Assembly: GCA_977020255.1 (NCBI GenBank)
Contig: CDROCS010003914.1
Location: 124,001-188,000, forward strand
DNA length: 64,000 bases
Source of the DNA: Obrimoposthia wandeli
Taxonomy: Eukaryota
Direction of reading: 5' to 3'
In this document: positions 33,943-39,806 of the stretch, one piece after another
Layout: each line of letters begins with the position of its first letter
Numbering within the stretch: the first letter of the stretch is position 1
Translations under genes and position numbers: made by a program
Notes under the pieces: generated by a model
Told to the model about the DNA's origin: nothing
The model's database searches: none
The model's input: only the letters and a program-made list of their open reading frames with translations

Positions 33943-34911
33943 ATGAGCCTTTTTAGTAGCAGTACCAGCACCTTAAAAGTAGTTGTTTTGTTGTTGCCAC
34001 AATCATCTTTAATGTCGCTCGCGGCTACATTAGATACGATGCGCGCCGCAAACCGCATTTCAAGGCGCAATCTATTTGATTGGCAAGTGAGCACTGTAGA
34101 TGGGGAGCCCGCTACCCTTAGCTGTGGACAAAAAATTCATCCTGATGGTGATTTAGAGCAAATGCAGCAAGGTGATTTACTTATTTGTATTGCAGCTTTT
34201 AGTCATCAAAAACACATGCCCGCTCGATACTTAACGCTGTTTAAAAAACAAGCCAAAAAATTTTCATACATTGGAGGAGTGGAATCAGGCAGCTGGATAT
34301 TAGCCAGAGCAGGTTATTTACAAGATAGAAAAGCGACCACTCACTGGGAAGATTTAGAAGATTTTCGCGATGCCTTTAACAATGTAAGTGTGCAACCTGA
34401 TCGCTACGTTATAGATGGTAAATATTTTACAACCGGTGGAGCGGCCCCCACTATCGATCTGTTTTTACATTTAATTGGCACGCGATACGGGCATACACTT
34501 GCTTTAGAAGTTGCCAGCGTCTTTATTTATGACGGCGGCCAACGCGCACAAACACCACAGCCATTAGTTTCGCTAGGTGCATTGCAAGCACAGCAGCCTA
34601 TAATAGCTGCAACTATTAGGCTAATGGAAAAACATATCGATGCACCTATTACCAGTCAAAACATTGCCCAACAGCTAGGTGTTTCTAGTCGCAGTTTAGA
34701 GCTATTATTTCGCAAAGAGCTAGCAACCAGCCCGCAACGTTATTATAAAAGGCTACGCTTGCAAGTTGCTAAGCGGCTAGTGCTTGGTAGTGAGCACAAT
34801 ATGCAAGAGATCGCGATTCGCTGCGGTTTTAATTCATTAGCCGCTTTCTCAAGAGAGTTTAAACGCTTCTTTGAAATGAGCCCTATGCATTATAGGCAAG
34901 AGCACAAGTGA
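33943..34911 (+). CDS. GlxA-family AraC regulator (DJ-1/PfpI domain plus HTH)
   Basis: RAANRIS, ESGSWILARAGYL, ATTHWED and TGGAAPTIDL; C-terminal double HTH. Confidence 0.93.
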   Translation: MSLFSSSTSTLKVVVLLLPQSSLMSLAATLDTMRAANRISRRNLFDWQVSTVDGEPATLSCGQKIHPDGDLEQMQQGDLLICIAAFSHQKHMPARYLTLFKKQAKKFSYIGGVESGSWILARAGYLQDRKATTHWEDLEDFRDAFNNVSVQPDRYVIDGKYFTTGGAAPTIDLFLHLIGTRYGHTLALEVASVFIYDGGQRAQTPQPLVSLGALQAQQPIIAATIRLMEKHIDAPITSQNIAQQLGVSSRSLELLFRKELATSPQRYYKRLRLQVAKRLVLGSEHNMQEIAIRCGFNSLAAFSREFKRFFEMSPMHYRQEHK

Positions 34912-35076
34912 CAGTAAACTTGTTAAGTTATTATTGTGCTGTCTTAAATCGGTCATAATTAACAGGTACACTGTGCATAAATATAAGCTTTGATAAGTAT
35001 TATGTCATGCACAAAGTTATGCTTTCTTACATAGTGAAATAATACGTTGAGTAATGCTCAGCGAATAAAGTTGAAA

Positions 35077-35105
35077 TTGACAATTTAAATTGAGTATGAG
35101 ATTCT
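35077..35105 (+). promoter_or_regulatory. Sigma70-type promoter of chrB-chrA
   Basis: TTGACA at 35077-35082, 17-bp spacer, TGn extended -10 then GATTCT at 35100-35105; predicted start about 35112. Confidence 0.55.
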
Positions 35106-35111
35106 CTGTTG

Positions 35112-35186
35112 TATGGGGCACACGGATGCCTCGTGAGGCGCCAGCTAAATTCCGCATCCTAAACCTATTAAAAGGAGGATGCTTAC
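35112..35186 (+). ncRNA. Structured cis-regulatory leader, riboswitch candidate (chrB-a/chrB-b-like)
   Basis: GCCTC-GT-GAGGC hairpin; GCATCC(T) at 35154-35160 can pair with GGATGC at 35124-35129 or with AGGATGC at 35176-35182, which overlaps the GGAGG RBS; directly upstream of chrB. Confidence 0.65.
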
Positions 35187-36014
35187 ATGGCGTCACCTAC
35201 GGAAATTACCTGTTCACAATTATCACGCTTAATAGGCACTAGTGATTGCCCTATTATCATAGATGTACGTATCGATGATGATTTTGCTGCAGACCCTTAT
35301 CTAATACCTAGTGCATTTAGACACCCCTTTAATCGTATCATGGAGATTGCTGAGCAACTTTTGCATGACAAACCTGTGCATAAAAGAGTCGTTATTTACT
35401 GCCAAAAAGGTTTTAAAATAAGCCAAGGTGCTGCTGCTTTATTACGCACTTATGGTGTGCAAACCGAAACGCTTCAAGGAGGACAGTTTTCTTGGCGAGA
35501 TGCGGGTTTACCATTACTAACGCTTGATAATCTACCGGTACCCGATGAAACGGGAGCGACGCTTTGGGTGACTAAACATCGACCCAAAATTGATCGCATA
35601 GCATGCCCTTGGTTGATCAGACGCTTCATTGATACTAAGGCAAAGTTTTTGTTTGTAGCCCCTTCCCAAGTGATCAATGTTGCAGAAAAGTTTAACGCTA
35701 CGCCGTTTGATGTGGAAGATGTGTTTTGGAGTCATCAAGATCAGTACTGTACCTTTGATAAACTAATCAGCGAATTCAACTTACACACTCCGGCCTTAGA
35801 TAAACTCGCTGTTATTGTTAGAGCTGCCGATACCAATTGCTTGGAACTCGCGCCTGAGGCTGCGGGCTTATTAGCGGCTTCTTTAGGTTTATCACGTATC
35901 TATCGCGACGATTTAGCGCAGCTAGAAGCGGGTTTTGATCTCTATGATGCCTTTTATCGTTGGGCGAGAGATGCCAGTAATGAAAGTCACCATTGGCCTG
36001 CTTCAACTAAATAA
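35187..36014 (+). CDS. chrB: Rhodanese-ChrB fusion (chromate-resistance protein ChrB)
   Basis: IIDVRIDDDF rhodanese domain, then WVTKHRPKIDRIACPWLIRRFID, TPFDV, CTFD and APEAAGL...SLGLSR of ChrB_C. Confidence 0.92.
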   Translation: MASPTEITCSQLSRLIGTSDCPIIIDVRIDDDFAADPYLIPSAFRHPFNRIMEIAEQLLHDKPVHKRVVIYCQKGFKISQGAAALLRTYGVQTETLQGGQFSWRDAGLPLLTLDNLPVPDETGATLWVTKHRPKIDRIACPWLIRRFIDTKAKFLFVAPSQVINVAEKFNATPFDVEDVFWSHQDQYCTFDKLISEFNLHTPALDKLAVIVRAADTNCLELAPEAAGLLAASLGLSRIYRDDLAQLEAGFDLYDAFYRWARDASNESHHWPASTK

Positions 36015-36085: not shown

Positions 36086-37471
36086 GTGTTAAAAGGTACC
36101 AACATGAATACACTAGAGATGGTTAATACAGCTACAGATTCAGCAAAAAAAATCTCACTAACAAAGATTTTTCAAATATTTTTAAAGATAGGCTTGCTAT
36201 CTTTTGGTGGGCCAGCAGCGCAAATATCACTGATGCATAAAGTATTAGTAGATGAGAATAAATGGTTGAGTGAGCAACAATATTTAAACGCATTGGGTTT
36301 CTGTATGCTCTTACCAGGACCTGAGGCTATGCAACTTGCTACCTATGCAGGTTGGCGTTTGCGAGGCATATTAGGCGGTTTAATCGCAGGATTACTGTTT
36401 GTAATACCTGGTGCAATAGTCATTTTATTGCTGGCGAGCCTTTATGCGCTTTATGCAGATACGACGTTTAATGATGTTGCGATAATTGATACTTTATTTT
36501 TGGGTGTTAAAGCCGCAGTGTTGATCATCGTGTTTGAAGCATTAATAAAAGTATCTAAAAGAGCATTAAAAGCCACCGCGCACTGGATCATTGCCACTTT
36601 GGCTTTTATCGGTATTTTCTTTTTATCAATCCCCTTTCCTTTAATTATCTTAATGGCTGCGTTGTATGGTTTTTTTGCCATAAAATCTGCAAAAAACACT
36701 TCACAAGGGATGTCAGCTGCCGCTCAGAATAACCCTAAGTTGGCGCATTCTCTGCGCAAAACATTGGCTATTATCGTCATTGGTGTCGGGTTGTGGTTTT
36801 TACCTATATTAGTAATTGAGCAGTTTACAGATCTGGTAATACTCAGTGATATAGCGCGATTTTTCTCCAAGTTAGCAGTGGTTACTTTTGGCGGAGCCTA
36901 TGCCGTGCTGGTGTATATGACGCAAGATGTGGTCACCCAATTTGGCTGGCTAACAACAGGGGAGATGATGGATGCACTAGGCTTGGCTGAAACTACGCCC
37001 GGACCACTAATTTTAGTCACGCAGTTTGTGGGCTTTATTGCGGCATTTAACCAAGGAGGGTACTGGTTAGCAGTGGCAGGTAGTGGTATTACTTTATGGG
37101 TTACTTTTGTGCCATGTTTTATTTGGGTGTTTGTGGGCGCACCCTATATCGAGTGGATGCACTCACAACAGCGCCTTAGTGCTGCTTTCTCGGCAATTAC
37201 AGCAGCGGTAGTAGGGGTTATTTTAAATTTATCAATTTGGTTTGCATTGCATTTGCTGTTTAAAAATGTGGATGTGCAAACTTGGCCTATAAGCTCATCT
37301 TTGAATGTGAATTTATCGCTATGGCAGCCACAATTAACAAGTATAGATTGGCGTATAATATTACTAACAGCCGTGTGCGCTGTTTTATTTTTTTATAAAC
37401 GAATTGGGGTTGTCCCGGTATTGCTAATAGCCTCTTTCTTGGGTTGGGGGCTCGTGAGTTTGGGTGCTTAA
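36086..37471 (+). CDS. chrA: Chromate-ion transporter (CHR family, long chain); probable start 36104
   Basis: SFGGPAAQI, LPGPEAMQLA, TFGGAYAVL and ETTPGPLI repeats. Confidence 0.95.
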   Translation: MLKGTNMNTLEMVNTATDSAKKISLTKIFQIFLKIGLLSFGGPAAQISLMHKVLVDENKWLSEQQYLNALGFCMLLPGPEAMQLATYAGWRLRGILGGLIAGLLFVIPGAIVILLLASLYALYADTTFNDVAIIDTLFLGVKAAVLIIVFEALIKVSKRALKATAHWIIATLAFIGIFFLSIPFPLIILMAALYGFFAIKSAKNTSQGMSAAAQNNPKLAHSLRKTLAIIVIGVGLWFLPILVIEQFTDLVILSDIARFFSKLAVVTFGGAYAVLVYMTQDVVTQFGWLTTGEMMDALGLAETTPGPLILVTQFVGFIAAFNQGGYWLAVAGSGITLWVTFVPCFIWVFVGAPYIEWMHSQQRLSAAFSAITAAVVGVILNLSIWFALHLLFKNVDVQTWPISSSLNVNLSLWQPQLTSIDWRIILLTAVCAVLFFYKRIGVVPVLLIASFLGWGLVSLGA

Positions 37472-37656: not shown

Positions 37657-37680
37657 TAAAACAGCCCGCTAAACGGGCTA
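37657..37680 (-). terminator. Intrinsic terminator after the chemoreceptor gene
   Basis: Minus strand TAGCCCG-tttag-CGGGCTG followed by TTTT. Confidence 0.7.
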
Positions 37681-37694
37681 TGTTAAATGTGGCT

Positions 37695-39806
37695 TTAGTG
37701 CTTGAAACGAGCAAGCTGTTGCTCAAGTGTTTTGACTAATTTAAAGAGGCGATCGCTCTCAGCCAAACTATCGTTTGAAGCATCTGCAACTTCATTGATC
37801 GCAGTATTAATATTACTAATATTACGAGAGATGTCTTCAGATACCTCTGCTTGCTGTTCAGATGAGGTCGCTATTTGGGAAGTCATATCATCTATTTCGT
37901 TAATATCAGAAACGACTGTATTCAATGTATCTACTGCTTTTTCAGAGCTGCTTAAACAATTTCCAACCGATTTGTTACCTTGTTCTAATGCCGTTACTGC
38001 TTGTTGCGAGCGCTCTTGTAGCTTGTCAATCAGCAGCTGAATTTCTTGAGTAGATTGCTGGGTTTTAGACGCTAAGTTACGAACTTCATCCGCTACTACA
38101 GAAAATCCACGTCCTTGCTCACCGGCACGTGCCGCTTCAATTGCTGCGTTTAATGCTAGTAAGTTAGTCTGCTGAGAAATGCCGTTGATAACTTCTACAA
38201 TTTTACTGATGTTTTCGCTATCCGATGCAAGTAGCTGCATTACAGAACCGACTTCCTCCATTTCTTTGGCGAGAACTTTAATAGACTCTGAGCTTTCTTT
38301 GACGTTTTCAGAGCCTGTACTGATCGCGTTTTTCGCCTGGCCTGCCGAATTGGCCGCTTCTTCTGCACTGCGCGCAACTTCTCCGGCATTGGCTGACATT
38401 TGTGTTACAGCTGCTGCTACCATTTCAATTTCTTCTCGTTGCTTATCTACACGGGTATTACTCTTTTTGGCTATTTCAGAAGTGCGTAGCGCTGAATCTT
38501 CAACATTAATCATCTCTCCTGCAATATCTTTAACTATACCTTGCGTCTTGCCAATAAAGGCATCGACTCCATCAGCCAGTTTTCCTATTTCATCTTTGCG
38601 CTTCATATTGAGACGGCTGGTCAAATCACCATCTTTTGAAGCGATATCTGTAATAACGGATGCTGAGTATTCAATTGGGCGAGAAATAGTACGTGCAAAT
38701 AATAGCAATGCAATAACTCCACCTATCCCAATCAGGATACTTAAGATTAGCTGCTCATTGATACTGTCTCTAAAGCTGTCTACCATTAGTTGATCTAGTT
38801 GGTCTGCTCCAGAGAGTGCTTCCGTTATTGGTACTAGAACAATAGCCCCCCAAGTATTGTCTAAAAGCTCAACCTTAATGGGCGAATAAGCTAAATAGTC
38901 ATTATTAAATTCTTCGAATGCTGTTTTTTTTGCTCCATTCCAATTCTTAAAGAGCGGCACAAACTCGGTTTCAAGTGCTTTACCAACGAGCTCAGACTTG
39001 TGTGAATCACCAGAGACTTTACCTCCAGAACTAACAATGATGACACGACCAATGCCGTCATATATTCGGCTAGAAGCATTCGTGGCGAATTTTTGAATCT
39101 GATCCAATCCAATATCAACTCCTGCCATACCATAGAGCTTACCGTTAACAATAATAGGTAAGGTAATAGATGTACCAAGAGTTTGTTTTCCCTGTACCTC
39201 CCATGAATAAGGTTCTGTGATACAAACACGTTTATTTTTAAGAGGGCACAAATACCAATCGTCGTTAGATGCGTCGTCTGAGCCACCGCTGCTCATAGCA
39301 TCTGCAAGATTAAGCGGCCTTAAGGCTAGCTTACCGTCTCCACTGCGATTCCAGTAAGGAGCGAATTGGCCATTTTCAAAGGTGTGACTACTTTTCTTAT
39401 CAATGTATTGAGCATCATTATTGTCAACAGCATTTTTTTCCCAAGCTGTATAGGTTCCTAAAATATCTTTGTTGTGTTCTAACACACCTTTAAGATATGC
39501 AGTCACACGATCACGATCAAGGGATACACTGTCATTATTTTGGATGAGAGTTTCAAGTGTCACTTTTATAGATAGCGCAATTGAAAGAGCTTTTTGAATA
39601 TTATTGGCAATTTTTGCCGATTCTAATTCAGCAATGGCTTGTAACTGTTGCTGAGATTTTGCTTGTAGCTCCTCTTTAATCAGTTTTGCAATATTCTTTT
39701 CAATTTTCTGATTGTTATAAGCCGTAATTCCGATGCTCGCGCCAACAGCAACGAGCAGGCAAATCGCTGAAATGAGGGCTATTTTGTACTGAATTCTATT
39801 TAACAT
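37695..39806 (-). CDS. Methyl-accepting chemotaxis protein with dCache_1 sensor (McpU/TlpQ/PctD-like)
   Basis: Two TM helices; [26 protein letters not shown] and AGVDIG; HAMP; [31 protein letters not shown]. Confidence 0.95.

What the first reader, a model, noticed from the sequence alone, without database searches (positions are those of the whole stretch)
35077..35189. Switch-like 5' leader on chrB-chrA: probable orphan riboswitch controlling a CHR-family transporter
Seen: a good promoter places the transcript start at about 35112, so the ~75-nt leader is almost all structure. It holds a GCCUC/GAGGC hairpin and one segment, GCAUCC(U) at 35154-35160, with two mutually exclusive partners: the 5' GGAUGC (35124-35129, RBS free) or AGGAUGC (35176-35182), which covers the GGAGG Shine-Dalgarno. 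A third register, CGGA (35123-35126) with UCCG (35151-35154), competes for the 5' strand and would favour the OFF hairpin. Knowledge: the chrB-a/chrB-b RNA motifs are orphan cis-regulatory candidates upstream of chrB genes, and I know of no established ligand. Inference: a translational ligand-sensing switch whose ligand would point to the real substrate of rhodanese-ChrB/ChrA. That may not be chromate; sulfate, thiosulfate, other oxyanions or an organic anion are possible.
Basis: partly seen in the sequence, partly recalled or inferred. Interest (0 to 1): 0.78.

Follow-up and report, generated by a model that had tools for sequence, protein, structure and literature searches.

The report
Known chrB-a leader RNA, gammaproteobacterial copy

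Summary
Window 35110-35189 (+) matches Rfam chrB-a (RF03078) over the full model, 49.8 bits against a gathering score of 43.9. It lies directly upstream of a rhodanese-ChrB_C gene and chrA. The same RNA precedes 55 of 62 related loci. These include the plasmid pLA6_12, whose chrBAC cassette is shown experimentally to give chromate tolerance.

Conserved features in 46 distinct leaders:
- P1 hairpin.
- An invariant GGC/GCY mini-hairpin (P1a).
- An SD-sequestering hairpin, P2, paired in 100% of cells.
- A covarying pseudoknot between the P1 loop and the 5' flank of P2. A chrB pseudoknot was already reported by CaCoFold in 2020.
- A -35 TTGAY box at a fixed distance from P1 in 44 of 44 upstream regions.

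Most likely mechanism, inferred: a translational ON switch. The pseudoknot competes for the closing pairs of P2, and in this lineage P1a competes with a helix that buries the AUG.

The ligand is unknown. Verdict: new member of a known kind, of moderate interest. The scan had not noted this motif before.

The parts
35077..35082 (+). -35 box TTGACA
   Evidence: Sequence. A TTGAY box sits at offset -37 to -39 from the first G of P1 in 44 of 44 distinct orthologous upstream regions, 35 of them TTGACA.
35097..35105 (+). TG-extended weak -10 box (TGaGATTCT), 17-nt spacer. Predicted transcript start about 35111-35114.
   Evidence: Sequence. Best -35/-10 pairing per locus leaves 2-6 nt between the -10 box and model position 1 in 23 of 24 loci. 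Inferred; no RNA data.
35110..35189 (+). chrB-a RNA (Rfam RF03078), full length
   Evidence: 49.8 bits against GA 43.9, model positions 1-80. 65.1 bits with my own model R1.
35114..35133 (+). P1 hairpin: UGGGGC (35114-19) pairs with GCCUCG (35128-33). Loop 35120-27.
   Evidence: Rfam alignment. 97% of cells paired; the loop-closing pair shows six standard pair types.
35123..35126 (+). Pseudoknot 5' strand CGGA, in the P1 loop
   Evidence: Pairs with 35151-35154. The family helix is 97% paired, 3 of 5 pairs have compensatory changes, and slid controls give 10-54%.
35137..35146 (+). P1a mini-hairpin: GGC, loop GCCA, GCU
   Evidence: Paired in 46 of 46 leaders, but the stem is invariant apart from G-C to G-U. 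Loop length and type vary. The Rfam seed holds one GAC/GUC compensatory case. The homologous hairpin is annotated in chrB-b.
35151..35154 (+). Pseudoknot 3' strand UCCG. G35154 is shared with P2.
   Evidence: In most leaders the overlap with P2 is 2 nt.
35154..35182 (+). P2, the SD-sequestering hairpin: GCAUCCU (35154-60) pairs with AGGAUGC (35176-82). An inner CCU (35164-66) pairs with AGG (35173-75). SD GGAGGA lies at 35174-79.
   Evidence: Rfam alignment. 100% paired in 46 leaders, with GC:27 and AU:18 at one pair. Predicted -11.2 kcal/mol.
35187..35194 (+). Start codon, and the 3' strand (UGGCGUC, 35188-94) of a 7-bp helix, P3, formed with GGCGCCA 35137-43
   Evidence: Part of the MFE fold. 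In the family it is 82.7% paired with one compensatory pair. It stands out from CDS windows in only 13 of 42 leaders. It is also present in pLA6_12.
35187..36014 (+). Rhodanese + ChrB_C protein, 275 aa
   Evidence: Pfam PF00581 and PF09828. The rhodanese part is nearest to ChrE in NCBIfam, below the cut-off. PGAP names homologues 'sulfurtransferase/chromate resistance protein'.
36086..37471 (+). chrA, a CHR-family transporter, 461 aa
   Evidence: Pfam PF02417, two stretches. TIGR00937, 216 bits, above the cut-off. chrA follows chrB in most loci that hold enough downstream DNA.

Best explanation
The element is a member of the chrB-a RNA family and forms the whole 5' leader of a rhodanese-ChrB_C/chrA operon. 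A rigidly placed promoter starts the transcript at the foot of P1.

The 5' two-thirds folds into a small pseudoknotted domain. It consists of P1, the P1a mini-hairpin, a few conserved unpaired A residues, and a pseudoknot between the P1 loop and the bases just 5' of P2.

The 3' third is the expression platform. P2 buries the Shine-Dalgarno sequence, and the start codon follows 4 nt after P2.

The pseudoknot's 3' strand shares its last 1-2 bases with the first bases of the anti-SD strand of P2. The folded domain and a full-length P2 therefore cannot coexist.

Proposed mechanism (inferred): a signal that stabilises the pseudoknotted domain removes the closing G-C pairs of P2. In this lineage, forming P1a also dissolves a 7-bp helix that buries the AUG. 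Translation of the resistance genes then switches ON.

The signal is most likely a small molecule or ion linked to chromate stress. Its identity is unknown.

Graded confidence:
- Family membership: about 0.97.
- Cis-acting translational control through P2: about 0.85.
- Direct small-molecule sensing: about 0.55.
- ON direction through the pseudoknot/P2 overlap: about 0.45.
For: Membership: Rfam hit above GA over the full model.

Association with the gene: chrB-a is above GA in 23 of 25 genome loci found through the protein alone, and in 55 of 62 loci with model R1. These include six gammaproteobacterial genome loci.

Structure: P1, P2 and the pseudoknot together are 97.8% paired, 0 of 500 shuffles reach this, and slid controls give 35-58%. 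The pseudoknot alone gives 97%, on an alignment that was not fitted to it. G-U pairs in P1 and P2 place the structure on the + strand RNA.

Promoter: -35 box at a fixed distance in 44 of 44 regions.

Overlap as a conserved design: bases G59 and C60 are claimed by both the pseudoknot and P2. In 5 chrB-b leaders with an unrelated P2 sequence, the last 2 nt of the pseudoknot strand are again the first 2 nt of an SD-sequestering hairpin.

Energetics: median predicted P2 stability is -10.5 kcal/mol, falling to -4.7 without the two shared pairs. The pseudoknot duplex is -5.4 kcal/mol, so the exchange is nearly balanced.

P3 and P1a share the strand 35137-43.

Function of the cassette: pLA6_12 carries the same leader and gives 10-20 fold higher chromate tolerance (PMC6789725).
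Against: - No binding data exist. The discoverers saw no binding to chromate or related chemicals in vitro (PMC5737381).
- No RNA-seq is available, so the transcript start is unproven.
- In the window the pseudoknot/P2 overlap is only 1 nt. P2 would still be about -7.8 kcal/mol without that pair, so the overlap alone may not open the SD here.
- P3 is not universal. It is absent where codon 2 is CCN, and it stands out in only 13 of 42 leaders.
- The shared G-C pairs and the P1a stem are invariant, so covariation cannot show which partner they use.
- The direction of the switch (ON or OFF) is inferred from gene function alone.
Confidence: 0.55

Rival explanations
1. Protein-mediated control. The pseudoknotted domain is the binding site of a protein, for example the rhodanese-ChrB_C product itself or another chromate-responsive factor. 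The protein, not the RNA, senses the signal.
For: In vitro ligand tests were negative. The motif is tightly linked to chrB genes. This ChrB lacks the N-terminal DNA-binding domain of canonical ChrB (Pfam finds only Rhodanese and ChrB_C), so its regulatory role, if it has one, needs another target. The same fold precedes other genes in chrB-carrying loci.
Against: No RNA-binding domain is recognisable in the protein. The fixed strong -35 box and the small aptamer-like fold with conserved unpaired A residues are typical of riboswitches. None of this is decisive.
Confidence: 0.2
2. OFF switch or constitutive damper. The pseudoknot stacks coaxially on the rest of P2 and stabilises SD sequestration. 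Either a 'no-stress' ligand such as sulfate does this, or no ligand is involved and the leader simply sets a low translation rate.
For: The pseudoknot 3' strand runs directly into the P2 5' strand, a geometry that allows stacking. In the window the pseudoknot and a 6-bp P2 can coexist. The default MFE fold buries both the SD and the AUG.
Against: The 2-nt overlap is kept in both chrB-a and chrB-b although the P2 sequences differ. This is easier to explain by competition. Repression by a ligand is an unusual logic for resistance genes. The discoverers report no binding to chemicals structurally related to chromate.
Confidence: 0.13
3. GCAUCC (35154-59) alternates between AGGAUGC (OFF) and the 5' GGAUGC at 35124-29 (ON), with CGGA/UCCG acting as a modulator.
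For: The 6-bp complement exists in the window and also in L001, L026 and L058. As a pseudoknot it would free the whole SD. Duplex energy is -8.2 kcal/mol.
Against: It is paired in only 58% of cells family-wide, and the slid controls score about as well on covariation. Five of its six bases are already fixed by P1 and the pseudoknot. In L058 the loop A-to-G change is compensated at the pseudoknot partner and not at this register. The fold with this helix enforced is 7.6 kcal/mol above the MFE and breaks 2 pairs of P1.
Confidence: 0.08
4. DNA-level element (an operator made of inverted repeats) or a chance structure.
For: The pseudoknot strands are an inverted repeat in the DNA.
Against: G-U pairs are tolerated in P1, P2 and the pseudoknot; they would be C-A mismatches on the other strand or in DNA symmetry. 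The promoter spacer and the upstream DNA are not conserved, while the transcribed leader is. Rfam E = 2e-5.
Confidence: 0.03

Closest known systems
chrB-a RNA motif (Rfam RF03078; Weinberg et al. 2017, PMC5737381)
   Same: Full-length covariance-model match above the gathering score. It has P1, the conserved GAGGCG-CA-GC-AA linker and an SD-containing P2, with the AUG right after P2 and a chrB gene downstream.
   Different: The host is an AT-rich (about 40% GC) gammaproteobacterial-type genome, whereas Rfam and the paper describe the motif as alphaproteobacterial. The score is low (49.8 bits) because of divergent bases: the loop reads CACGGA instead of GCGAUC, the linker reads AAAU instead of AAGA, and the pseudoknot is shifted to CGGA/UCCG with a 1-nt overlap with P2. 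The Rfam consensus structure lacks the pseudoknot and P1a.
chrB-b RNA motif (Rfam RF03086)
   Same: Same core: a GGGG/CCCC P1, a loop whose GCNN pairs with a 3' strand after a conserved AAG, and an intervening hairpin that equals P1a. The SD hairpin starts inside the pseudoknot strand.
   Different: The window has no chrB-b match. The chrB-b model stops before the expression platform. In the fetched loci it precedes TauE/SafE, Fe/Mn SOD or a YncE-like propeller, not chrB.
chrB pseudoknot predicted by CaCoFold (Rivas 2020, PMC7657543)
   Same: That paper lists chrB RNA as an example of a new pseudoknot with covariation support. The helix I tested is the only pseudoknot I found with such support.
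   Different: I could not see their figure, so identity of the two helices is presumed. The overlap with P2 and the link to chrB-b are my own reading.
Translational ON riboswitches such as the Vibrio vulnificus add adenine riboswitch (from my own knowledge)
   Same: In both, an aptamer helix competes with a repressor stem for part of the anti-SD strand, so ligand binding frees the SD and AUG.
   Different: No sequence or fold relationship. Here the competing helix is a pseudoknot and the overlap is only 1-2 nt. No ligand is known.
Fluoride (crcB) riboswitch (from my own knowledge)
   Same: A small pseudoknotted RNA of about 50 nt that senses an anion and controls exporter and resistance genes.
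   Different: No Rfam match and no sequence similarity. Anion binding by chrB RNA has been sought and not found.

Membership tests
chrB-a (RF03078) | Covariance-model score at or above the curated gathering score, over the full model | tested here: met
   49.8 bits against 43.9, model positions 1-80, E = 2e-5 for the window.
chrB-a (RF03078) | P1 hairpin (GGGG/CCCC core) with a loop of about 8 nt | tested here: met
   35114-19 pairs with 35128-33, loop 35120-27. Family: 97% paired, with compensatory changes.
chrB-a (RF03078) | Conserved linker GAGGCG-CA-GCC-AAG between P1 and P2 | tested here: met
   The window reads GAGGCGCCAGCUAAAU. The invariant A, G, G, C and A columns are kept. It deviates at GCU and at AAAU.
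chrB-a (RF03078) | P2 hairpin holding the Shine-Dalgarno sequence, with the start codon a few nt after it | tested here: met
   35154-59 pairs with 35177-82, GGAGGA at 35174-79, ATG at 35187. 100% paired in 46 leaders.
chrB-a (RF03078) | Lies in the 5' UTR of a chromate-resistance gene | tested here: met
   Rhodanese-ChrB_C, then chrA. The same order is seen in the orthologous loci and in the annotated plasmids.
chrB-a (RF03078) | Pseudoknot between the P1 loop and the 5' flank of P2 (a later addition to the model, by CaCoFold) | tested here: met
   CGGA 35123-26 pairs with UCCG 35151-54. Family: 97% paired, 3 of 5 pairs compensatory.
chrB-b (RF03086) | Covariance-model match | tested here: not met
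   No chrB-b hit in the window at the gathering score, nor up to E = 10 in 34900-35400.
Riboswitch (metabolite- or ion-sensing cis-regulatory RNA) | Conserved structured domain with covariation, joined to an overlapping expression platform | tested here: met
Riboswitch (metabolite- or ion-sensing cis-regulatory RNA) | Direct, selective ligand binding by the RNA | not testable with these tools
   The only report is negative for chromate and related chemicals (PMC5737381). No later paper is in the held library.
Riboswitch (metabolite- or ion-sensing cis-regulatory RNA) | Ligand-dependent change of gene expression in vivo | not testable with these tools
   No RNA run holds this stretch. pLA6_12 shows that the cassette works, not that the leader regulates it.

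The most novel reading that the evidence does not exclude
chrB-a and chrB-b are two versions of one pseudoknotted aptamer (P1, P1a, AAG, pseudoknot). Its pseudoknot acts as an anti-sequestor by taking the closing pairs of the SD hairpin. In the marine clade P1a also competes with a helix over the start codon. Its true ligand is not free chromate. It is instead a chromate-stress product or a sulfur oxyanion, which would account for the negative binding tests and for the TauE/SafE, SOD and rhodanese genes under its control.
Probability: 0.25. Interest if true: 0.65.

Novelty: new member of a known kind. Interest (0 to 1): 0.33.

Why it matters
chrB RNAs are among the riboswitch candidates of 2017 that still have no ligand. 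If one is found, it would be either the first RNA sensor of chromate stress or a pointer to the physiological signal behind CHR-family transporters.

This copy does not change that picture. The comparison made here does add four usable points:
- The motif travels with the rhodanese-chrB/chrA cassette between marine alpha- and gammaproteobacteria.
- The same leader sits on pLA6_12, a 7-kb plasmid with a proven chromate phenotype in a transformable host. That offers a ready test bed.
- The promoter is rigidly spaced, so the RNA to be tested can be defined exactly.
- The pseudoknot/P2 overlap, and in this clade the P1a/AUG helix, give specific mutations to test.

Tried and rejected

3. An all-against-all covariation scan suggested two further pairs in alignment A2: columns 31-44 and 37-61. 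The second looked like a possible base triple with the P2 pair 61-150. Reading the 163-sequence Rfam seed showed many mismatches for 31-44. It also showed common U-G cases and one C-A case for 37-61. I dropped both as effects of shared ancestry.

4. P3 (linker with start codon) as a universal feature: rejected. It is significant only in some clades, so I keep it as a lineage-restricted feature.

5. RNA-seq evidence for the transcript start: no RNA run holds the stretch.

6. blastn of chrB-b against plasmids: no match.

7. The AraC/DJ-1 regulator upstream as part of the system: it is shared only with L001, so it is not part of the conserved unit.

8. Recent transfer judged from base composition: the cassette has the same G+C as its surroundings, so composition gives no signal. 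The ChrB tree does not resolve a donor.

Full report
**1. What is there.**
The window between the AraC/DJ-1 regulator gene (33943-34911) and the ATG at 35187 was read directly. A scan of the whole 64-kb window against Rfam gave a single hit above a gathering score. It is chrB-a (RF03078) at 35110-35189 on the + strand, 49.8 bits against 43.9, covering model positions 1-80, with E = 2e-5.

The alignment to the model gives these elements:
- P1: UGGGGC (35114-19) pairs with GCCUCG (35128-33).
- A conserved linker, GAGGCGCCAGCUAAAU.
- P2: GCAUCC (35154-59) pairs with GGAUGC (35177-82). P2 holds the Shine-Dalgarno GGAGGA, and the start codon follows 4 nt after it.

The single-sequence fold is -34.9 kcal/mol, z = -3.87.

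Downstream genes are a 275-aa Rhodanese + ChrB_C protein and a 461-aa CHR transporter (NCBIfam). PGAP names the homologues 'sulfurtransferase/chromate resistance protein'.

**2. Is it conserved?**
Loci were fetched through the protein alone: 25 from genomes and 37 from metagenomes.
- Rfam chrB-a is above its gathering score, immediately upstream of the gene, in 23 of the 25 genome loci and in most metagenome loci.
- My own model R1 was built with P1 and P2 only. It found 55 leaders, 46 of them distinct.
- Loci labelled Oceanospirillaceae (L001, 93% protein identity; L006), Granulosicoccus (L002, L005) and Gammaproteobacteria (L003, L007) carry the motif.
- In a ChrB tree these gammaproteobacterial sequences sit in a clade with 99/99 support, together with marine Rhodobacterales. 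The clade is unresolved inside.

Rfam and the original paper describe the motif as alphaproteobacterial. The cassette has the same G+C, about 0.40-0.43, as its surroundings.

**3.

| Pairing | Result |
|---|---|
| P1 and P2 together | 98.6% of cells paired; P2 alone 100% |
| P1 loop-closing pair | six standard pair types |
| P2, one pair | GC:27, AU:18 |
| P2, another pair | UA:33, UG:13 |
| 'Third register' CGGA (35123-26) / UCCG (35151-54) | 5-bp family helix, 97% paired, 3 pairs with compensatory changes, 0 of 500 shuffles as good, slid controls 10-54% |
| 'ON' pairing GGAUGC (35124-29) / GCAUCC | 58% paired; three of six pairs broken in 29-39 of 46 leaders |
| GCCUC/GAGGC hairpin | 67% paired, no covariation, 2-nt loop, uses the P1 3' strand |

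The third-register helix was tested on an alignment that was not fitted to it. It is a pseudoknot between the P1 loop and the bases just 5' of P2. A covariation-supported chrB pseudoknot was already reported by CaCoFold (PMC7657543). The Rfam consensus structure still lacks it.

The 'ON' pairing is complete only in the window, L001, L026 and L058. Five of its six bases are already fixed by P1 and the pseudoknot. In L058 the loop A-to-G change is compensated at the pseudoknot partner, not at this register. Enforcing this helix costs 7.6 kcal/mol relative to the MFE.

**4.

(a) *P1a.* GGC (35137-39) pairs with GCU (35144-46) around a 4-nt loop.
- It is paired in 46 of 46 leaders, but the stem is invariant, so covariation is silent.
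- Loop length and type change between leaders: GCCA, GUCA, GUAA, UUCG, UUUG, GACAU.
- One Rfam seed sequence has a compensatory GAC/GUC stem.
- The chrB-b model annotates the homologous hairpin.

(b) *chrB-a and chrB-b share one core.* Both have P1, a conserved A, P1a, AAG and a pseudoknot strand. In chrB-b the loop GCAG pairs with the tail CUGC.

(c) *Promoter.* A TTGAY box starts 37-39 nt before the first G of P1 in 44 of 44 distinct upstream regions; 35 of them are TTGACA. About 0.04 would be expected by chance. The spacer and the -10 box vary. No RNA run holds this stretch.

(d) *Overlap of pseudoknot and P2.* The last two bases of the pseudoknot 3' strand are the first two bases of the P2 5' strand. 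In the window only G35154 is shared. The same arrangement recurs in five chrB-b leaders whose SD hairpins have unrelated sequences. Predicted median P2 stability falls from -10.5 to -4.7 kcal/mol when the two shared pairs are lost. The pseudoknot duplex is -5.4 kcal/mol.

(e) *P3.* In the window's MFE fold, GGCGCCA (35137-43) pairs with UGGCGUC (35188-94) and buries the AUG. This strand is also the P1a strand.
- Across the family the helix is 82.7% paired, with one compensatory pair (AU:20, CG:7, UG:6, GU:3, GC:1, 9 unpaired).
- It fails where codon 2 is CCN.
- It beats ordinary CDS windows in only 13 of 42 leaders.
- It is present in the window's marine clade, including pLA6_12.

**5. Gene context and function.**
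- chrA follows the rhodanese-chrB gene in most loci that hold enough downstream DNA.
- An annotated Sphingobium plasmid has the order chrB-a, ChrB-domain protein, chrA, Fe/Mn SOD.
- The closest plasmid homologue (67% identity) is the 7,053-bp plasmid pLA6_12, found identical in three Rhodobacterales genera. It carries chrB-a directly upstream of chrB1.
- Transfer of pLA6_12 into Phaeobacter inhibens raised chromate tolerance 10-20 fold (PMC6789725).
- chrB-b precedes TauE/SafE (L023, L033, L061), a Fe/Mn SOD (L042) and a YncE-like propeller (L022).

The regulon therefore looks like a chromate or oxidative stress regulon. It does not look like a sulfate-uptake regulon. The TauE/SafE and rhodanese links keep a sulfur oxyanion possible as the signal.

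**6. Mechanism.**
Shown by the comparison:
- a conserved pseudoknotted 5' domain;
- a conserved SD-sequestering hairpin;
- their 1-2-nt overlap;
- a fixed promoter.

Inferred: stabilising the 5' domain, by an unknown ligand or factor, removes the closing pairs of P2. In this clade it also dissolves P3. Translation then turns ON. The logic resembles translational ON riboswitches such as the add adenine switch (my own knowledge).

Main rivals:
- a protein that binds the domain;
- an OFF switch or constitutive damper in which the pseudoknot stacks on P2;

The discoverers found no binding of chromate or related chemicals. The held literature has nothing newer.

**7. Verdict.**
Part of the drawn switch is wrong. 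The element is a new, divergent, gammaproteobacterial member of a known orphan motif. It adds test handles but no new kind of system.

Noticed in passing
L011:1010-1382, L015:1845-2201, L008:1-211: In three marine Rhodobacterales loci an alpha-type tmRNA gene lies 0.7-2.7 kb upstream of the chrB-a/chrB cassette. tmRNA genes are common island integration sites, which fits a mobile cassette.
   Followed up: no
L023:2031-3003, L033:209-1229, L061:164-1168: Tandem arrangement: chrB-b RNA, a TauE/SafE-family exporter gene, chrB-a RNA, then the rhodanese-chrB gene. In L042 chrB-b precedes a Fe/Mn superoxide dismutase. In L022 it precedes a YncE-like beta-propeller.
   Followed up: partly
L065 (CP031597.1) 1706-1825: The 7,053-bp RepL plasmid pLA6_12 is identical in Marinibacterium, Roseovarius and Celeribacter. 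It carries a chrB-a leader with the same P3 start-codon helix as the window, upstream of chrB1-chrA1-chrC1.
   Followed up: partly
L007:2840-2959: This leader has a G+C-rich insertion of about 40 nt in the P2 loop. The insertion folds on itself, giving a predicted P2 of -28 kcal/mol.
   Followed up: no
L016:2924-3003 and L021: L016 has a degenerate leader (34 bits with R1, below Rfam GA). Its P2 is held by three G-U pairs, and its P1a loop would be only 2 nt. L021 has chrB and chrA but no detectable chrB-a.
   Followed up: partly
L023:3825-5220: Here chrA is split into two half-size CHR ORFs (216 and 292 aa) instead of one long chrA.
   Followed up: no
window 33943-34911: An AraC-type regulator with a DJ-1/PfpI domain lies just upstream on the same strand. 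It is shared only with the nearest relative L001, so it is probably unrelated to the chr operon.
   Followed up: partly
window 37366-37384 and 37661-37681: A terminator-like hairpin lies inside the 3' end of the chrA ORF. A second, on the - strand, follows the convergent MCP gene (37695-39806).
   Followed up: no
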